A DNA stretch of 63,009 nucleotides, the filler included, from Octopus bimaculoides (lineage: Eukaryota), in NCBI RefSeq assembly GCF_001194135.2. It is 6 parts of 5 records of this genome, joined end to end, with 100 filler letters (N's around TTAATTAATTAA, not from the genome) between each part and the next. Parts side by side here need not be neighbours in the genome. Positions count along the whole stretch, not along the records: positions 55,818 to 63,009 come from NC_068983.1; 5 more parts are not named here. One strand, 5' to 3'. Under the pieces are notes generated by a model. The model was not told where the DNA came from and searched no databases. It saw nothing but the letters and a program-made list of their open reading frames with translations. Numbering within the stretch: position 1 is the stretch's first letter; each line of letters starts with the position of its first letter. Shown one piece after another: positions 55,818-63,009 of the stretch. The translations under genes and the position numbers were made by a program.

Positions 55818-56141
55818 CTGCTCGTGAAATTAACGTGCAAGTGGCTGAGCACTCCACAGACACGTGTACCCTTAACGTAGTTCTCGGGGATATTCAGCGT
55901 GACACGGTGTGACAAGGCTGACCCTTTGAATTACAGGCACAACAGAAACAGGAAGTAAGAGTGAGAGAAAGTTGTGGTGAAAGAGTACAGCAGGGTTCGC
56001 CACCATCCCCTGCCGGAGCCTCGTGGAGCTTTAGGTGTTTTCGGTCAATAAATACTCTCACAACGCCCGGTCTGGGAATCGAAACCGCGATCCTATGACC
56101 GCGAGTCCGCTGCCCTAACCACTGGGCCATTGCGCCTCCAC
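55818..56141 (-). mobile_element. tRNA-type SINE family D
   Basis: Revcomp head gtggaggcgcaatggcccagtggttagggcagcggactcgcggtc...gtttcgattccc (A and B box-like). Other copies: 37948-38060 (+, head only) and about 56400-56575 (-, tail). Confidence 0.85.
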
Positions 56142-57198
56142 TTATGTGCAATAAATTGGCTATAATTCGACAATAAACAAAATATTTTAGCAATTTTTTA
56201 TACAGTTCTTAATAATATATAATTATAAATATATAATGGGATATTTTAAACAGAGTGGCTAAGGATGGGTCTCTGTAGAGTAATGTAAGAATTAAGGGGG
56301 TCCATAAGTTAAAATTGGTTGCGTACCACTGCTTTACACGGAAGAAGCAGTTGATTATATTGATTTAAGTACTCGAATAAATATCATATCTGACACTCTA
56401 TCAGTTACGACGACGAACGTTCCAGTTGATCCAACCAACGGAACAACCTGCACGTGAAATTAACGTGCAAGTGGCTGAGCACTCCACAGACACGTGTACC
56501 CTTAACGTAGTTCTCTGGAAGATTCGGCGTGACACAGAATGTAACAAGGCTGGCCTTTTGAAATACAGGCACTACTCATTTTTGCCAGCTGAGTGGACTG
56601 GAGCATAGTGAAATAAAGTGTCTTGCTCAAGGACACAGCGCGTCGCCAAGAATCGAACTCATGGTCATGAGCCGAATACTCCTAACCACTAAGCCACGCG
56701 CCTTCACAGAACTTGAATAATAATTTATTCTATTGATCTTAGATGGAGGGAAGTGGATTTCAACGGAATTTGAATACAGAATTTTTTATTTCTGGTAGGA
56801 ATTTAGTACTTAGCGTTTCCTTCACCCAACCAATGCTGAGAGAGAGTGGGAGGGAAAGAGAGAGGGGAAAGAGAGAGTGTGCGGAGAAAGAGAGGAATTG
56901 ATCCCAGTACTTAGATGTTGTTTTGTTTATCGATTCTAGAAGTANNNNNNNNNNNNNNNNNNNNNNNNNNNNNNNNNNNNNNNNNNNNNNNNNNNNNNNN
57001 NNNNNNNNNNNNNNNNNNNNNNNNNNNNNNNNNNNNNNNNNNNNNNNNNNNNNNNNNNNNNNNNNNNNNNNNNNNNNNNNNNNNNNNNNNNNNNNNNNNN
57101 NNNNNNNNNNNNNNNNNNNNNNNNNNNNNNNNNNNNNNNNNNNNAACCAGCCTCTTCGTGGGAGTGTTAGGAATTATTGTTATTATTGTACCAGCAGA

Positions 57199-57414
57199 TT
57201 CTTTTCTACTCTAGGCACAAGGCCCGAAATTTTGGGGGAGGGGAACAGCCGATTAGATCGACCCCAGTGCGCAACTGGTACTTAATTCATCGACCCCGAA
57301 AGGATGAAAGGCAAAGTCGACCTCGGCGGAATTTGAACTCAGAACGTAAAGACAGACGAAATACTGCTAAGCATTTTGCCCGGCGTGCTAACGTTTCTGC
57401 CAGTCGTCGCCTTA
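57199..57414 (-). mobile_element. tRNA-type SINE family A
   Basis: Reverse complement of the family A consensus seen at 29410. Confidence 0.85.
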
Positions 57415-57504
57415 CTGTACCAGCAAATTGAAAGTGATGTAATCGGGTCAGTGGTTCCAGGTAAATGATAGATATGTGGTTCGGGTTCCGTCAATGGGTT
57501 TAAT

Positions 57505-57925
57505 TTCATTGAAGGCTGTGTGGTTAAGCTCACTTTGTAACCCCATGGTTTCGAGTTCAGTCCCACCGTGCGATACCTTGGGTAAATGTCTTCTACTATT
57601 GTTCAGGTCGACCAATGCCTTGTGAGGAAATTTGATTGACGAAAACTGTTCAGAAGACTGTGGCATGTATGTGTGTGAATGTGCGTGTGTGTGCGTATGG
57701 GTGTATGTCTTTGTGCCTGTTTCCCACCACCACCACCGCTTGACAACTAGTGTTGGTTTGTTTAAATACCATAAAATAGCGGGTCAGCTAAAGATCCTCA
57801 TAGAATAAATAGCAGACTTTGGCAATAATAAGTTTTGGGGTCGATATGTTCGAGTAAAACCCTTCAAGGTGGTCTTCAGCATGGCCGTAGTCCAATGACT
57901 GAAACAAGCAAAAAGGTAAAAGATA
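57505..57925 (+). mobile_element. tRNA-type SINE family B, diverged
   Basis: Head ggctgtgtggttaag...gagttcagtcccaccgtg, central (TG)n, tail catggccgtagtccaatgactgaaacaag. Confidence 0.75.
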
Positions 57926-59546
57926 GTATAAAGGTAGCACATTTACTCGACATTTAAGGAAAGTATCATTGATTCCTAAGATCAATGACAAGCCTAAGAT
58001 CAACAACGTTCTATCAGTGACCATCCCATCTTTAATGAGGTGTGAACGACCACGTAAAAAGTCCATCGTTGTTTCGCGTAGAGACTCACTATTGACGTGA
58101 AGTTCGGCAGACTTGGTGCAGAGCCAGATAAAATTCTTGTGCTCTGATTACAAATCCTGTTCTCTTCGACTATAATTTTCGTTCCTTTAATGTCTATAAA
58201 ATACCTATCATTTAAGTATTAGGCTCGATTTAATGGATTTCTGAATTTCCGCAAAATCTTTTGTTCTTCTGTAGATGTTAAAAATCCCTGTTATGAAGCA
58301 AGTGGTCGATTAGTGGATTAGCAGGACCAATACAATGCCATACTAAAAGAACAGCTGAGCATACTTATTGGAAAGAACATTAAATATCTTAATTAGAAAC
58401 AATTATACGCAGTTGAAAAAAAACAATATTAGTCATTGAAAATATTTCTTTTTAAAGTTTTTGGCGAGTACCGATGCATATTTCAGTCTTACGCGACCTC
58501 GTCGGAAAAGCAAACACTTCATCGTACTTGCCATATAGAATACTTTGCGACATTTAGTTATGTCATATTCTGCAAATGGTGACTATAGGACTGTTTTGAT
58601 TTAGTTTTACTAAGTGATTATGCGAAGTAAAATCCTTATATACTGATTTTCTTCCATAAATTCTAGGTGCCACCAATACTTTTAGGCAAAAGCAAGAGTG
58701 GAAAAATGCGTCATGCGTCATGGATTTTAGTGGCTTTATGCAACAAGAGAGTGAGAGTTAATCTTTGCTTGCAGATCTAGTTTCATTCGTCCAGGTGTTT
58801 GTCAGTAAAGCAACAAATAAATTTAATTCAACTGAAGAAAGTGTAAACCATTCACTTGACTTTAGCAACCTCATGTTTAGAAACCTGTTGCTAGTATTCT
58901 GACGTTAGTAACACGATACTGGTAATTTGACACCGACAACATGATACCAAAAACCTGGTGATAGCGTTAAGATGTGAACAACTTAAATACTGCTGCTACT
59001 GTTGTTGTTGTTGTTGTTGTTATTGTCCTTATATTTGTTTACCTCCAGATCAACCCAGACATGGCATACTTATGATTAAGGACATTCAAGTCATTACCAA
59101 CTTGTCTTGTTTTTATATATCAGAGTCTATATTGTGCAATATGCCCTTTCTTTTTTAAAGAGTGCATTTTGAAGGAGACTTACATGCTATTTCTAACAGC
59201 GGAAGCTCTCTCGTTATCTCGTATTACAACTAGATGCTGTAGTTATTGTTGCTTAGTCCTATTTCAGCTCTGATCAAGCAGACCTTGGAATAAAAACATC
59301 CGAACCATGGCCCTTAAGTCTTTTCAGACAATTTATCTCAGATTACGTTATCCAATATGTCCATTTTTAAGCTGAGGACGTGTTTTCCAAGGAAATTTAG
59401 CTGTTATTTCTAACAGGTTGAACTGTTAGGTAGAAACTCCTAGCCTGAGCTCTTAAGGTCTGTACTTCGGTGCTAACCTGCTGATGAAGATGAAAGCCAA
59501 TAACCTTACTGTAATATTTTTTCAAGATATAGTGTAGCTAGAACTA

Positions 59547-59745
59547 CGCGGGGGTGCTGAAAAGTTTCTGGCTTTAGGTAACAGAAAATACAAGATCAGT
59601 TAATTATAATTTTATTCAACATATTCCCCTCTCAGCAGTTCTTCAGTTTTCCTAAGCCCTGTAAAAGAGCTCGGAAGGTTAGGCCTCCAACCAGGCCTTT
59701 CAGCAATCCCTCATATATTATCCAATGTGTTAATCTTTTTCTAGA
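59547..59745 (-). mobile_element. mariner-type transposon end
   Basis: TA|CGCGGGGGGTGCTGAAAAGTTTCTGGCT TIR-like end. The - strand encodes a degenerate mariner C-terminus ending GEYVE-stop. Confidence 0.55.
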
Positions 59746-60448
59746 CGGTAAGGTGAGATAAAGGTGGGGAGCTTTAACCGCTAGTTCCAGGTGTTCGATA
59801 CACAACGTAAAGGCTTCCTCATTGGCTTTTCTTCTTTTATGAATCAGCATTACATCAACAGTTAATAAGCGACACGCCATCAACAAGACTTGAGAATTAA
59901 TCTGTTTGTTCATACTAAGTTAGCTATTAGTAACCTACTGCAGTGTAAGTTTTAATGACATAGTGTTTCTTTCCTATATCTAACTTTACTGCTCGAAAAC
60001 CGATATAGGATTTTTTTTTTCGGGAAAAATATAATTCACACTCACACATAGGCACGCAAACACGTGCGTGCACAGTTACTAACTATGTCTATTTTTCGCA
60101 GCGAGGCTAAAACTAAGCTTATTGAACGAATTATTGTGACTTTAAAATAATCATCTATGTATCCTGCTTAACGTAAATAAATCGTTGAAAGACAATTTAC
60201 AGTGGTATTCGTCCAGAGATGGCGTCTCCTGTGGCCATGCTATACTTAAAATCCTAATATATATGTGTGTGTGTGTGTGTTTATATATAACGATGACCAC
60301 TAAGTGGACATCGTTATATATAAACATATACATTAATCCTCTAAGATCTCAGATATTTTTTATGAATCTCTCTGATTCTTTCAATGTGCTAGCTTCCTGG
60401 TAATAAATCGATATTAATATATGATTTTTTACCCTATGCTTTAATTTG

Positions 60449-60479
<31 letters not shown>

Positions 60480-60482
<3 letters not shown>

Positions 60483-60635
60483 GGGCTTCTTTCAGTTTCC
60501 GTCTACCAAATCCACTCACAAGGCTTTGCTTGGCTCGAGACTATAGTAGAAGACACTTGCCCAAGATACCACGCAGTGGAATTGAACCGAAACCATGTGG
60601 TGAGGAAGCAAGCTTCTTACCGCAGTCATGCCAGC
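60480..60635 (-). mobile_element. SINE family B 5' half in otopetrin intron
   Basis: gggcttctttcagtttccgtctaccaaatccactcacaaggctttg...gacacttgcccaag is the reverse complement of the family B head. Confidence 0.8.
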
Positions 60636-60804
60636 ACTGATATGTGGGAGGGGGGTGTATCTGTACTCATACATACATACATACATACATACATACATGC
60701 ATAAATACATATAAGTATATTTCTCCGACTTGATTTGTTCTTCAGTTTTTCCGACATTCCAGAATGATATCCAGTCAATTATTTATATCCTTGTATTTCA
60801 CTAG

Positions 60805-60968
60805 GTTTTGGTATCGGTGGTATGATCCACAGTGGTCTACAACTGGGACAGCATTTGCAACTTATCGGTGGATCGAATGACTGTGATGGTCTAATGCAAA
60901 TTGTAAAGCCATTATTTCATCTGGTTTTTACTTTTGTCCAACTCTACTTTGTATTTCTCAACCCTAAG
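60805..60968 (+). CDS. OTOP: Otopetrin-family proton channel, internal exon (end of TM3, TM3-4 loop, TM4)
   Basis: Acceptor ttgtatttcactag|GT at 60804/60805 and donor AAG|gtaaac at 60968/60969. Translates (x)FGIGGMIHSGLQLGQHLQLIGGSNDCDGLMQIVKPLFHLVFTFVQLYFVFLNPK, matching the otopetrin motifs FG.G.MI.SGL..G and P....F.F.Q.YF.FLN. Ends in phase 0, compatible with the next exon. Symbol is family-level only. Confidence 0.9.
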
Positions 60969-61655
60969 GTAAACTATTTAAATTTACAGATTTTTCTTTT
61001 TTCGTTTTTAATTTGGTCTACAAGATTTTTTATGGGACACCGTGTGTTGAAACAGATTTTGATTGATCCCGGGAAGGTCATTATGCCAATAATAAACACA
61101 CGCACTTATTCAATTTTACTTCTTTATTATTAGTCAATAACATTCCCGCTCTACTCCAGGGTAGCTTGAACATGCCATTGAAGGGGTAGTGAATGGCAAC
61201 GAAAGTACTTTGACAAAGAACTGGTTGAGTGATTAACCAAAAGAGAAAGCAAACAATCGTTTACTGAGCTGGTTAAATGACTAACCAGCTGATTAATAAT
61301 GAAAAAGTGCAACTTAACCAATGTGTGTGCTTATCAACGATATAATGATCTTCCCAAGTTACAGGTTCTTATCATTCGGGCTACAGCTTTTAAGAATTTT
61401 TTTTTTATGTTTTACATTAACGAATTATATGATCATATATATAACTATTAGTGCTCTGATTTTTAATGTTGTGTAACCATCAAGGTTAGCTTTGTGATAG
61501 CAAAGCTATGATCAAGTCATTTCCAACCATATCTTATTTTAAAACATAGTATATCTAGGACTACACTATCCGATGTATCTTTCCATTTCTTAAAATGATA
61601 GGATATGATTTGATACAGCGGTGACTGTTCATTCTAGTAGGTCAACCATTCACAT

Positions 61656-62015
61656 GTTGTGGCACTCCGTCGCTTACGACGTCGAGGGTTCCAGTTGATC
61701 CGATCAACGGAACAGCCTGCTCGTGAAATTAACGTGCAAGTGGCTGAGCACTCCACAGACACGTGTACCCTTAACGTAGTTCTCGGGGATATTCAGCGTG
61801 ACAAGGCTGACCCTTTGAATTACAGGCACAACAGAAACAGGAAGTAAGAGTGAGAGAAAGTTGTGGTGAAAGAGTACAGCAAGGTTCGCCACCATCTCCT
61901 GCCGGAACCTCGTGGAGCTTTAGGTGTTTTCGCTCAATAAACACTCACAACGCCCGATCTGGGAATCGAAACCGCGATCCTATGACCGCGAGTCCGCTGC
62001 CCTAACCACTGGGCA
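61656..62015 (-). mobile_element. tRNA-type SINE family D in otopetrin intron
   Basis: Highly similar to 55818-56141 over its length, plus the 3' tail ggaaccctcgacgtcgtaagcgacggagtgccacaac. Confidence 0.85.
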
Positions 62016-62160
62016 CCTTCACTGAGAGTAGCCCTGAGATAATCTATAATTTTAAGTAAATCATCAGTTGAAGATATTTCATTCCACATACGTCATAAAC
62101 ATCTTTGAAAATGCATGAACAAATTACTCTCCTCTAATTGTTTATTTTTGTTTACCACAG

Positions 62161-62488
62161 GTTTGCATCCATCGCTACAAGACATTGGCTCGTTTCGGAT
62201 TAATGCATATGTGCGGCACAAATATTTGTGTCTGGTTTCGTAATATTGTAGTGGAAACACTGCATGAGATGCATTCTGGGATTGCTCACTCTTCGAACGG
62301 TCATGGCAGTCACGGTCACGATCATCCTCTCGTTGAACATCACCAAAACAATCACACTACACATCCAAGTATTCATATGCATACCGTTCATCACGTTAAA
62401 GATACACATCATATAGAACATTCTCACAACTCGTCTCTTCAGCTCCATTCTCACCACAATGGAAATGTTTCTTCCACGCTAATTGCAG
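62161..62488 (+). CDS. OTOP: Otopetrin-family proton channel, internal exon (TM5 plus His-rich TM5-TM6 loop)
   Basis: Acceptor ttatttttgtttaccacag|GTT and donor GCAG|gtaatt at 62488/62489. Phase-0 start gives VCIHRYKTLARFGLMHMCGTNICVWFRNIVVETLHE, the otopetrin TM5 signature ARFGLMH...TN..VW, followed by a His-rich loop. Downstream exons (TM6-TM12) lie beyond the window or are not recognisable. Confidence 0.9.
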
Positions 62489-62544
62489 GTAATTGCGGAC
62501 ATTCTTTACCTTTTATTTTCCGTAAAAGAAGCACAGGCATGGTT

Positions 62545-62780
62545 GTGTGTTTAAGAAACTCACCACGGCGTCTTGGGCATGTGACATCCGCTACAACCCT
62601 AGCCGGCCAAACCTATGTGAATCAGTTTGGTAGAAGGAAAGCGCGCGTATGTGTGTATGTGACAACTGTTGTCGGTTTGTTCAGGTCCCCGTAACTAAAG
62701 GTTTGACAAAAAAAAGCCGACAGAATAATTACCAGAGTTTAAAAATGAGTACTGGGGTCGATCTGCCCGACTAAAGTCTT
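62545..62780 (+). mobile_element. Old, diverged SINE family B copy in otopetrin intron
   Basis: gtcttgggcatgtg...tttggtagaaggaaa...tgacaactgttgtcggtttg...ccccgtaactaaag...gtactggggtcga align to the family B body. Confidence 0.6.
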
Positions 62781-63009
62781 CAAATTTTCTTGTATCAAAA
62801 CTCAAGGAAACATGTCTTATGTCTATTCCCTATGAGTTCCTCCAAAATTCCTTTCGAACGAATTTTTGTGAGCATTTATTTATTCATTTATTTTCTGCAA
62901 TGCGTGTGCGTGCGTGTGTGTGTGTGTGTGTGCATTTACTTATGCTTATATAATATTTATAGATATATACAGCGATTTTCTTTTAAAAATCCTGTCTGCA
63001 TGAGCATTA

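What the first reader, a model, noticed from the sequence alone, without database searches (positions are those of the whole stretch)
62161..62488. Otopetrin proton channel with a massively His-expanded extracellular TM5-TM6 loop
Seen: after the TM5 signature the exon encodes HEMHSGIAHSSNGHGSHGHDHPLVEHHQNNHTTHPSIHMHTVHHVKDTHHIEHSHNSSLQLHSHH, 22 His in about 75 residues. These use mixed codons rather than a microsatellite, which suggests selection at protein level. Established: with a cytosolic N-terminus and 12 TMs the 5-6 linker is extracellular; extracellular loops and their histidines are implicated in pH gating and Zn2+ modulation of vertebrate OTOP channels. The pore Gln (FVQLY) and Asn (GTNIC) equivalents are retained. 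Inference: a lineage-specific proton or metal (Zn/Cu/Ni) sensing or buffering antenna, possibly in sucker chemosensation, statocyst biomineralisation or acid-base regulation.
Basis: partly seen in the sequence, partly recalled or inferred. Interest (0 to 1): 0.8.

Follow-up and report, generated by a model that had tools for sequence, protein, structure and literature searches.

The report
Histidine-rich outer loop in an octopus-like otopetrin
Two exons of an unannotated mollusc (octopus-like) otopetrin proton-channel gene encode an outward-facing loop with 22 histidines in 65 residues; the tract is real and looks selected, but it is the extreme case of a feature shared with sea-slug, snail, shrimp and tardigrade relatives rather than a one-off invention.

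Summary
Exon 62161-62488 (+) has canonical AG/GT borders and joins exon 60805-60968 in phase. It encodes TM5 of an otopetrin (Pfam PF03189, E 2e-34), then 22 His in 65 residues. The His codons are mixed (13 CAT, 9 CAC), there is no DNA repeat, and the enrichment is specific to this reading frame.

- The tract lies in the TM5-TM6 linker, which is extracellular and unresolved in cryo-EM structures.
- Published mutagenesis links this linker to pH sensing and Zn2+ activation.
- The Gln and Asn of the N-domain QNY triad are retained.

"Lineage-specific" is not supported. Among 70 near relatives with a complete loop, 11 have at least 10 His per 65 residues:
- gastropods: Aplysia OtopLc 17, Babylonia 17, Nucella 14, Elysia 12;
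- crustaceans: 10-14;
- a beetle: 11.

Fragments with incomplete loops from Biomphalaria (15) and a tardigrade (11) add to these. Loop length and exon structure match the gastropod genes. The window is the top of this range (22 against a maximum of 17).

Interspersed repeats indicate octopod DNA. The annotated Octopus OtopLc is a different, His-poor paralogue, and no annotated protein contains this exon.

The most likely role is a titratable, metal-binding modulator of gating. This is inferred, not tested. Moderate interest.

The parts
60805..60968 (+). Upstream coding exon (164 nt). It encodes (G)FGIGGMIHSGLQLGQHLQLIGGSNDCDGLMQIVKPLFHLVFTFVQLYFVFLNPK, the helix carrying the Gln (FVQLY) of the N-domain QNY triad.
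   Evidence: Translation. AG at 60803-4 and donor AAG|GTAAAC scoring 7.1 bits. tblastn hits from 11 OTOP proteins. Q aligns to zfOtop1 Q174. Same acceptor and donor positions in contig L003.
60969..62160 (+). Phase-0 intron (1192 nt) between the two exons. It contains a SINE-like repeat at about 61660-62014.
   Evidence: GT at 60969 and AG at 62159-60. Repeat families D1, D3, D4 and D5. The repeat matches Octopus sinensis DNA.
62161..62488 (+). Coding exon (328 nt; starts in phase 0, ends in phase 1). It encodes TM5 plus the first ~78 residues of the TM5-TM6 linker.
   Evidence: Donor CAG|GTAATT scores 8.6 bits; within the exon body every other GT scores 2.9 bits or less. Same exon start and same phase-1 end in contigs L001, L002 and L005.
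62188..62256 (+). TM5 core ARFGLMHMCGTNICVWFRNIVVE, with the Asn (GTN) of the QNY triad.
   Evidence: Ungapped alignment to zfOtop1, mouse OTOP2 and CeOTOP8 chains. N aligns to zfOtop1 N204.
62263..62265 (+). First His of the run (ETLHE). This post-TM5 His aligns with a His in zfOtop1 and mouse OTOP2.
   Evidence: Alignment (zf SETEHFMH, mOTOP2 DESVHQAH). PMC10101688 states that a His at the mOTOP3-H234 position is conserved in all mouse OTOPs. Equivalence to hOTOP1 H229 is inferred.
62263..62457 (+). His-rich tract: 22 His in 65 residues (13 CAT, 9 CAC). Also rich in Ser, Asn, Thr and Gly, with few acidic residues.
   Evidence: No tandem repeat.
62350..62358 (+). N-glycosylation sequon NHT within the tract.
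   Evidence: Consistent with a luminal/extracellular loop (inference).
62428..62436 (+). N-glycosylation sequon NSS.
62464..62472 (+). N-glycosylation sequon NVS just before the exon end. It sits where gastropod relatives have NLT or NVS before GRKL.

Best explanation
These are two internal exons of an otopetrin (OtopLc-like) proton-channel gene in octopod-like DNA. No annotated protein in the searched collections carries this exon. Exon B encodes TM5 and the start of the extracellular TM5-TM6 linker.

The linker begins with the family-conserved post-TM5 histidine and continues as a compositionally selected, probably disordered His/Ser/Asn-rich tract with three glycosylation sequons.

The tract belongs to a class of His-rich TM5-TM6 linkers found in a subset of protostome OtopLc-like channels (gastropods, crustaceans, a tardigrade, a beetle), and is the most His-dense example found here.

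Inferred mechanism. The linker lies over the pore mouths, next to the TM11-12 linker, as in vertebrate OTOPs. It would act as a titratable, metal-binding modulator of gating. With an assumed His pKa of about 6.3, its net charge swings from about -5 at seawater pH to about +14 at pH 5.5 per subunit. This swing, or Zn2+/Cu2+/Ni2+ coordination by its many HxH, HH and HxxH motifs, would shift channel opening or conductance in the near-neutral pH range.

Shown: gene identity, position of the tract, frame-specific His enrichment, conserved exon structure, recurrence in relatives. Inferred: extracellular exposure, disorder, and any effect on gating or metals.
For: Identity and position:
- Pfam Otopetrin, E 2.1e-34.
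- Solved OTOP1, OTOP2, OTOP3 and CeOTOP8 chains align without gaps through TM5.
- The Q and N of the QNY triad are retained.
- The tract starts where the zfOtop1 model stops (residues 222-247 unresolved).

Selection on composition:
- 22 in-frame CAY against 2 and 1 in the other frames; 0 of 20,000 shuffles reach 22; no DNA repeat.
- In His-rich relatives the loop is 12-18% His against 2-4% in the rest of the protein. The tract sequences themselves are not alignable.

Recurrence:
- 11 of 70 complete loops have at least 10 His per 65 residues. Taxa were identified.

Exon structure:
- The same TM5-plus-tract exon, with the same phases, occurs in L001, L002 and L005.

Functional precedent:
- hOTOP1 linker 5-6 is essential, and H229 in it is critical for proton sensing (PMC9585144).
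- mOTOP3 H234/E238 in the 5-6 linker, together with H531/E535 in the 11-12 linker, form the proposed Zn2+ activation site (PMC10101688).
- CeOTOP8 post-TM5 residues switch between helix and disorder with pH and press on the TM11-12 loop (PMC11343839).

Charge curve.
Against: - No functional, expression or structural data exist for this protein or for any His-rich OtopLc relative. A full-text search for 'otopetrin' with 'histidine-rich' found no relevant paper.
- Only TM4-TM5 lie in the piece, so the intactness of the gene is unknown.
- No annotated Octopus protein contains the exon, so expression is unproven.
- hOTOP1 H229R and H229K retain proton sensitivity, so even the conserved His may not act by simple protonation.
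- Mouse OTOP2 has a mildly His-rich linker (HQAHSYSGSHGNTSHT) yet is not Zn2+-potentiated.
- Many close relatives, including the Octopus OtopLc paralogue, do without the tract.
Confidence: 0.5

Rival explanations
1. Proton-collecting or proton-releasing antenna. The clustered imidazoles act as a local mobile buffer at the pore mouth. They would raise the rate at which protons are captured from, or released to, alkaline seawater or haemolymph. The effect would be on permeation rather than gating, for example to support acid extrusion in calcifying or acid-base regulating cells.
For: - There are 22 titratable groups with pKa near neutrality next to the pore entrances.
- Taxa with such loops are mostly marine calcifiers: gastropods, decapods and an amphipod.
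- An otopetrin drives acid efflux in sea-urchin biomineralisation (Chang et al. 2021, seen only as an entry in the reference list of PMC11343839).
Against: - A tardigrade and a beetle also have His-rich loops.
- Other mollusc OTOP paralogues lack them.
- No measurement exists.
- A full-text search for otopetrin with mantle and shell returned no papers.
Confidence: 0.2
2. Tolerated low-complexity drift. The TM5-TM6 linker is a variable, unstructured spacer, and the His richness has no specific function.
For: - Post-TM5 length and sequence vary widely among OTOPs (PMC11343839). Loops range from 38 to 274 aa with 0-21 His.
- Tract sequences are not alignable between species.
- The phylogeny of the 93 alignable residues cannot show that the feature was inherited (bootstrap 11/200 and 12/200).
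Against: - The enrichment is frame-specific, with mixed codons and no slippage signature.
- The same composition is kept in the same loop across at least seven gastropod genera despite sequence turnover. It recurs in arthropods and a tardigrade.
- In most relatives the His enrichment is confined to this loop.
- The loop is a known gating element.
Confidence: 0.2
3. Unexpressed relic. The exons belong to a decaying or silent paralogue, which is why no annotated protein contains them.
For: - No protein in the 5.8-billion-cluster collection or the 1.84-billion representative library carries the exon, although three Octopus proteomes are present.
- A SINE-like repeat lies about 145 nt upstream of the exon B acceptor.
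Against: - Both exons are open.
- Splice sites are canonical, strong, and conserved in position and phase.
- Key pore residues are retained.
- The fragment is 62-68% identical to gastropod relatives across TM4-TM5.
Confidence: 0.1

Closest known systems
Gastropod OtopLc / OtopLc-like proteins: Aplysia californica XP_012937048.1, Babylonia areolata XP_076437542.1, Nucella lapillus KAL8576899.1, Elysia marginata GFS20326.1, Biomphalaria glabrata A0A2C9LNV5
   Same: - Highest identity over TM4-TM5 (62-68%).
- His-rich TM5-TM6 linker of about 100-125 aa.
- A glycosylation sequon before the exon end.
- The same exon, holding TM5 plus the tract and ending in phase 1 (seen in unnamed gastropod-like contigs L001, L002 and L005).
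   Different: - The window has 22 His per 65 residues against 12-17.
- It has far fewer acidic residues: 6 D/E in the exon-B part of the loop against 12-15 in the complete gastropod loops. The calculated charge at pH 5.5 is about +14 against +4 to +12.
- It lacks the GRKL motif.
- Orthology is unresolved by bootstrap.
Vertebrate OTOP1, OTOP2 and OTOP3 (solved structures 6NF4, 6NF6, 6O84, 8UG6)
   Same: - Same family and fold.
- Q and N of the N-domain QNY triad are retained.
- The post-TM5 His is conserved.
- The TM5-TM6 linker is extracellular, flexible, and part of the pH/Zn2+ gating apparatus.
   Different: The vertebrate linker is about 26-30 residues with two His tested in hOTOP1. Here exon B alone contributes about 78 residues with 22 His. 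Mouse OTOP2 is mildly His-rich (5 His in 17 residues).
C. elegans OTOP8 (8UG4)
   Same: It has a long post-TM5 segment (residues 244-270). This segment is helical at high pH and disordered at low pH, and leans on the TM11-12 loop. This is a precedent for a pH-switchable post-TM5 element.
   Different: The authors regard that helix as unique to CeOTOP8. Only its first ten residues (244-253) were seen aligned here, and they contain no His; the composition of 254-270 was not examined. The sequence after TM5 is unrelated.
Octopus OtopLc (LOC106867546; XP_014767932.1 and isoforms) and the Sepia pharaonis homologue CAE1316989.1
   Same: An OTOP of the same animal group. The repeats in the window match Octopus sinensis DNA.
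   Different: - Only 58% identical over TM4-TM5.
- It never groups with the window (0 of 200 bootstraps).
- Its 88-aa linker has 3 His, plus an alternatively included 9-aa segment.
His-rich loops of ZIP and CDF/ZnT metal transporters and plant IRT1
   Same: Disordered His-rich loops that bind and sense Zn2+ and related metals. This is a working analogy only (titles and abstracts seen; otherwise general knowledge).
   Different: Unrelated folds. Several of those loops (for example IRT1's) are cytosolic. No ZIP or CDF domain is present here.

Membership tests
Otopetrin proton channels (Pfam PF03189) | Significant match to the Otopetrin domain profile | tested here: met
   119.6 bits against a curated cut-off of 27.8, E 2.1e-34, profile positions 9-157 of 434.
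Otopetrin proton channels (Pfam PF03189) | N-domain Gln-Asn-Tyr triad | tested here: inconclusive
   Gln (FVQLY) and Asn (GTNIC) align to zfOtop1 Q174 and N204. The Tyr lies in TM6, which is outside the piece.
Otopetrin proton channels (Pfam PF03189) | Twelve TM helices in two six-helix barrels; TM6 Glu and TM12 His proton-transfer pair | not testable with these tools
   tblastn with 11 OTOP proteins finds only the two exons (TM4-TM5) in 55818-63009.
Otopetrin proton channels (Pfam PF03189) | Proton-selective conductance | not testable with these tools
   Needs electrophysiology.
Protostome OtopLc-like channels with a His-rich TM5-TM6 linker (a grouping defined here, not in the literature) | At least 10 His in a 65-residue window of the TM5-TM6 linker, with low His content elsewhere | tested here: met
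   The window has 22. Relatives have 10-17 (11 of 70 complete loops), with 2-4% His in the rest of the protein.
Protostome OtopLc-like channels with a His-rich TM5-TM6 linker (a grouping defined here, not in the literature) | TM5 plus tract on one exon that starts at [VM]CIHRYK and ends in phase 1 after ...L[LHI][AT] | tested here: met
   Window 62161-62488. The same structure is seen in L001, L002 and L005.
Protostome OtopLc-like channels with a His-rich TM5-TM6 linker (a grouping defined here, not in the literature) | Common descent with the gastropod His-rich clade | tested here: inconclusive
   NJ bootstrap on about 93 residues: window with the His-rich clade 11/200, with the His-poor clade 12/200, with Octopus/Sepia OtopLc 0/200.
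Microsatellite or slippage-generated homopolymer tract | Tandem DNA repeat, or a single codon used throughout | tested here: not met
   No TRF array in the exon. One 12-nt pair only. Codons are 13 CAT and 9 CAC.
ZIP / CDF metal transporters | ZIP or cation-efflux domain | tested here: not met
   Only PF03189 is found at E up to 1.

The most novel reading that the evidence does not exclude
His-rich TM5-TM6 linkers define a functionally distinct, so far undescribed subclass of protostome otopetrins. In this subclass a disordered polyhistidine-like extracellular loop sets the channel's operating range near neutral pH, or makes it a sensor of Zn2+/Cu2+. The octopod gene would be its most extreme natural variant, and a currently unannotated second OTOP lineage in cephalopods.
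Probability: 0.25. Interest if true: 0.6.

Novelty: new variant of a known kind. Interest (0 to 1): 0.4.

Why it matters
The gating mechanism of otopetrin channels is still open, and the TM5-TM6 and TM11-12 linkers are the current candidates for the pH/Zn2+ sensor.

A natural series of linkers carrying 0 to 22 histidines in otherwise similar channels offers ready-made material for chimeras and deletions. This includes paired His-rich and His-poor paralogues in both Aplysia and octopus.

Such experiments could test whether linker protonation or metal binding controls opening. They could also test whether marine invertebrates tune proton channels to seawater or haemolymph pH.

The finding also flags a probable gap in cephalopod gene annotation. 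It is not a new kind of system.

Tried and rejected
- Exact look-up of the window ORF 62185-62691 in 153 billion gene positions found nothing.
- The word-indexed homologue search returned only 9 fragments.
- ARAGORN found no tRNA. Rfam gave only sub-threshold hits on microsatellites.
- The look-up of Octopus isoform P0027 was not on record. The O. bimaculoides gene spans 184 kb, so no DNA was returned. The partial O. sinensis gene gave L004 instead.
- SRA run numbers of the Logan contigs cannot be turned into species names here.
- The first bootstrap script timed out. A lighter version ran, but the 93 alignable residues do not resolve the tree.
- The alignment of the window fragment with the eligible fragments (A1) is too shallow and partly misaligned. 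No structure prediction was run, because a TM4-TM5 fragment would not give a meaningful model and topology is already set by the cryo-EM homologues.
- A microsatellite origin was rejected.
- An internal in-frame donor that removes the tract is considered unlikely. The three phase-1 GTs within or just before the tract score about 1 bit against 8.6 for the real donor, using a crude PWM.
- Literature searches for otopetrin with histidine-rich, with cephalopod, and with mantle plus shell gave nothing relevant.

Full report
**What is in the sequence**

The piece 55818-63009 is AT-rich (39% G+C) and full of microsatellites and SINE-like repeats. It has a 200-N gap at 56945-57144.

tblastn with eleven otopetrin proteins finds exactly two coding exons, both on the + strand.
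- Exon A, 60805-60968, follows an AG at 60803-4 and ends AAG|GTAAAC. It encodes (G)FGIGGMIHSGLQLGQHLQLIGGSNDCDGLMQIVKPLFHLVFTFVQLYFVFLNPK.
- Exon B, 62161-62488, follows an AG at 62159-60 and ends CAG|GTAATT. It encodes VCIHRYKTLARFGLMHMCGTNICVWFRNIVVETLHEMHSGIAHSSNGHGSHGHDHPLVEHHQNNHTTHPSIHMHTVHHVKDTHHIEHSHNSSLQLHSHHNGNVSSTLIA plus one base.
- The other two frames of exon B are closed.

**Is the histidine run real and non-random?**

- The tract 62263-62457 has 22 His in 65 residues, encoded by 13 CAT and 9 CAC.
- CAY triplets number 22 in frame against 2 and 1 in the other frames.
- No shuffle out of 20,000 of the same nucleotides reached 22 (maximum 13).
- TRF finds no array in the exon. The only internal direct repeat is one 12-nt pair.

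The enrichment is therefore at the protein level and not a slippage product.

**What the protein is and where the tract sits**

The joined peptide matches Pfam Otopetrin (E 2.1e-34; 119.6 bits against a cut-off of 27.8). It aligns without gaps to solved mouse OTOP2, CeOTOP8 and zebrafish Otop1, and also matches Xenopus and chicken OTOP3.

With the residue numbers of the zebrafish structure paper (QNY triad Q174/N204/Y268), FVQLY carries the Gln and GTNIC the Asn.

The zebrafish model stops at residue 221 and resumes at 248. In the alignment, residue 221 corresponds to the H of ...ETLHEMH. The His tract is therefore the start of the TM5-TM6 linker, which is unresolved in every cryo-EM structure.

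The literature describes this linker as extracellular, about 30 residues long in human OTOP1, and functionally important:
- H229 in it is critical for proton sensing (PMC9585144).
- In mouse OTOP3, H234 and E238 of the 5-6 linker, with H531 and E535 of the 11-12 linker, form the proposed Zn2+ activation site. A His at the 234 position is conserved in all mouse OTOPs (PMC10101688).
- In CeOTOP8 the 27 residues after TM5 are helical at high pH and disordered at low pH, and push on the TM11-12 loop (PMC11343839).

The first His of the window's run (ETLHE, 62263-62265) aligns with a His in zebrafish Otop1 and mouse OTOP2. It is probably that conserved residue. Three N-x-S/T sequons in the tract fit an extracellular or luminal loop.

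**Is it lineage-specific?**

To avoid bias I searched 1.84 billion cluster representatives with only the TM4-TM5 part of the peptide, leaving out the tract. This gave 849 hits, the best at 67% identity. I then delimited the TM5-TM6 loop in the best 150 with the TN..W and YP..IEY motifs.

Of 70 representatives with a complete loop:
- the median maximum is 4.5 His per 65 residues;
- 11 have at least 10, seven at least 12, and two at least 15;
- the maximum is 17.

Cluster look-ups name the taxa.

| Group | His-rich relatives (max His per 65 residues) |
|---|---|
| Gastropods | Aplysia californica OtopLc (17), Babylonia areolata (17), Nucella lapillus (14), Elysia marginata (12), a Biomphalaria fragment (15); Arion vulgaris (incomplete loop, at least 8 His) and Batillaria attramentaria (short 54-aa loop, 6 His) fall in the same clade |
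| Decapods | Panulirus, Penaeus, Palaemon (13-14) |
| Amphipod | Hyalella (10) |
| Tardigrade | Paramacrobiotus (11) |
| Beetle | Callosobruchus (11) |

His-poor relatives include a second Aplysia paralogue, Littorina, Lottia, a Biomphalaria OtopLc-like protein, a scallop, an annelid, and the Octopus and Sepia OtopLc proteins.

In the His-rich proteins the loop is 12-18% His against 2-4% elsewhere. Their loops are 100-149 residues long. The window's exon B alone gives 78 residues, and the next exon would add about 35-40 if it resembles the gastropod genes. The loop is therefore not unusually long for its clade.

The gastropod-like contigs L001, L002 and L005 show the same exon. It starts at [VM]CIHRYK, contains TM5 plus the tract, and ends in phase 1. 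L005 also has the following exon, which begins the TM6 region (C.W..MMGK..PYLYPCTIEYS).

So the feature is a recurrent, compositionally conserved class. The window is its extreme: 22 His, and fewer acidic residues (6 against 12-15 in the gastropod loops). This gives a calculated net charge of about -5 at pH 8.1 and about +14 at pH 5.5.

Whether the octopod and gastropod tracts share an origin is unresolved. With about 93 alignable residues, the window joins the His-rich gastropod clade in 11 of 200 bootstraps and the His-poor clade in 12 of 200. It never joins Octopus/Sepia OtopLc (0 of 200).

**Source organism and annotation**

The interspersed repeats of the piece match a 30-kb stretch of Octopus sinensis (L004) at 84-92% identity over 142-323 bp, at several places. 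The gastropod contigs match only the exons. The DNA is therefore octopod-like.

No protein in either large collection carries this exon, although O. bimaculoides, O. sinensis and O. vulgaris proteomes are present. The annotated Octopus OtopLc is only 58% identical over TM4-TM5 and has 3 His in its 88-residue loop. The gene is thus either unannotated in those genomes or comes from another octopod.

**Mechanism**

Nothing here measures function. The best-supported reading is that the tract is an enlarged version of a known gating element: a flexible extracellular loop next to the TM11-12 linker whose protonation state or metal occupancy biases opening. I give this reading about 0.5, counting identity and position as near-certain and the mechanism as inference.

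Rivals are a proton-collecting or proton-releasing antenna that affects flux (0.2), tolerated low-complexity drift (0.2), and an unexpressed relic (0.1).

A crude donor-site scan finds no credible internal donor. Within the exon body every other GT scores 2.9 bits or less, against 8.6 for the real donor. Only transcript data can settle this.

**Novelty**

Full-text searches found no description of His-rich otopetrin loops. They found nothing on cephalopod or molluscan shell-related otopetrins. The Drosophila namesake OtopLc has no known role and is not needed for acid taste.

The sequences of the gastropod and crustacean examples are already public. This is a new variant of a known kind, of moderate interest mainly as experimental material for the OTOP gating question. 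It is not a categorically new system.

Noticed in passing
window 55818-56141, 56391-56708, 61660-62014 (one family); also 57198-57414, 57514-57926, 60449-60624: SINE-like interspersed repeats. Copies 1 and 3 are 96-99% identical to each other. Several families match a 30-kb Octopus sinensis stretch (L004) at 84-92% identity, which points to an octopod source. One copy lies in the intron about 145 nt upstream of exon B.
   Followed up: partly
window 60805-60968 and 62161-62488: No annotated protein in the searched collections contains these exons, although three Octopus proteomes are present. This is probably an unannotated OTOP paralogue, or the source is an unsampled octopod species.
   Followed up: partly
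related proteins P0185 vs P0191/P0194 (Octopus bimaculoides OtopLc isoforms): Isoforms differ by a 9-residue insert (DLS[IV]IISST) inside their own TM5-TM6 linker. Alternative splicing therefore acts on this loop in the His-poor paralogue.
   Followed up: no
L005 1-3143 (Logan SRR34434959): A compact gastropod-like OTOP gene with short introns. It shows the full exon pattern around the His tract: TM4 exon, TM5-plus-tract exon, TM6 exon, then the rest in one exon.
   Followed up: partly
window 56945-57144: A run of exactly 200 N, which is an assembly gap. An upstream OTOP exon could be hidden there.
   Followed up: no
window 60263-60336 and 60658-60714: Rfam mir-297 and mir-4012 hits far below the gathering score. 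They fall on (TG)n and (CATA)n microsatellites and are not credible miRNA genes.
   Followed up: yes
window 60780-60794: In frame with exon A, the polypyrimidine tract upstream of the acceptor reads YLYPC, mimicking the TM6 hallmark PYLYPC. A stop codon lies at 60765-60767. Probably chance.
   Followed up: no
related protein P0035 (Palaemon carinicauda): It has a second His-rich stretch (21 His in 65 residues) outside the TM5-TM6 linker, unlike most other relatives examined (a JGI metagenome protein, P0024, reaches 13).
   Followed up: no
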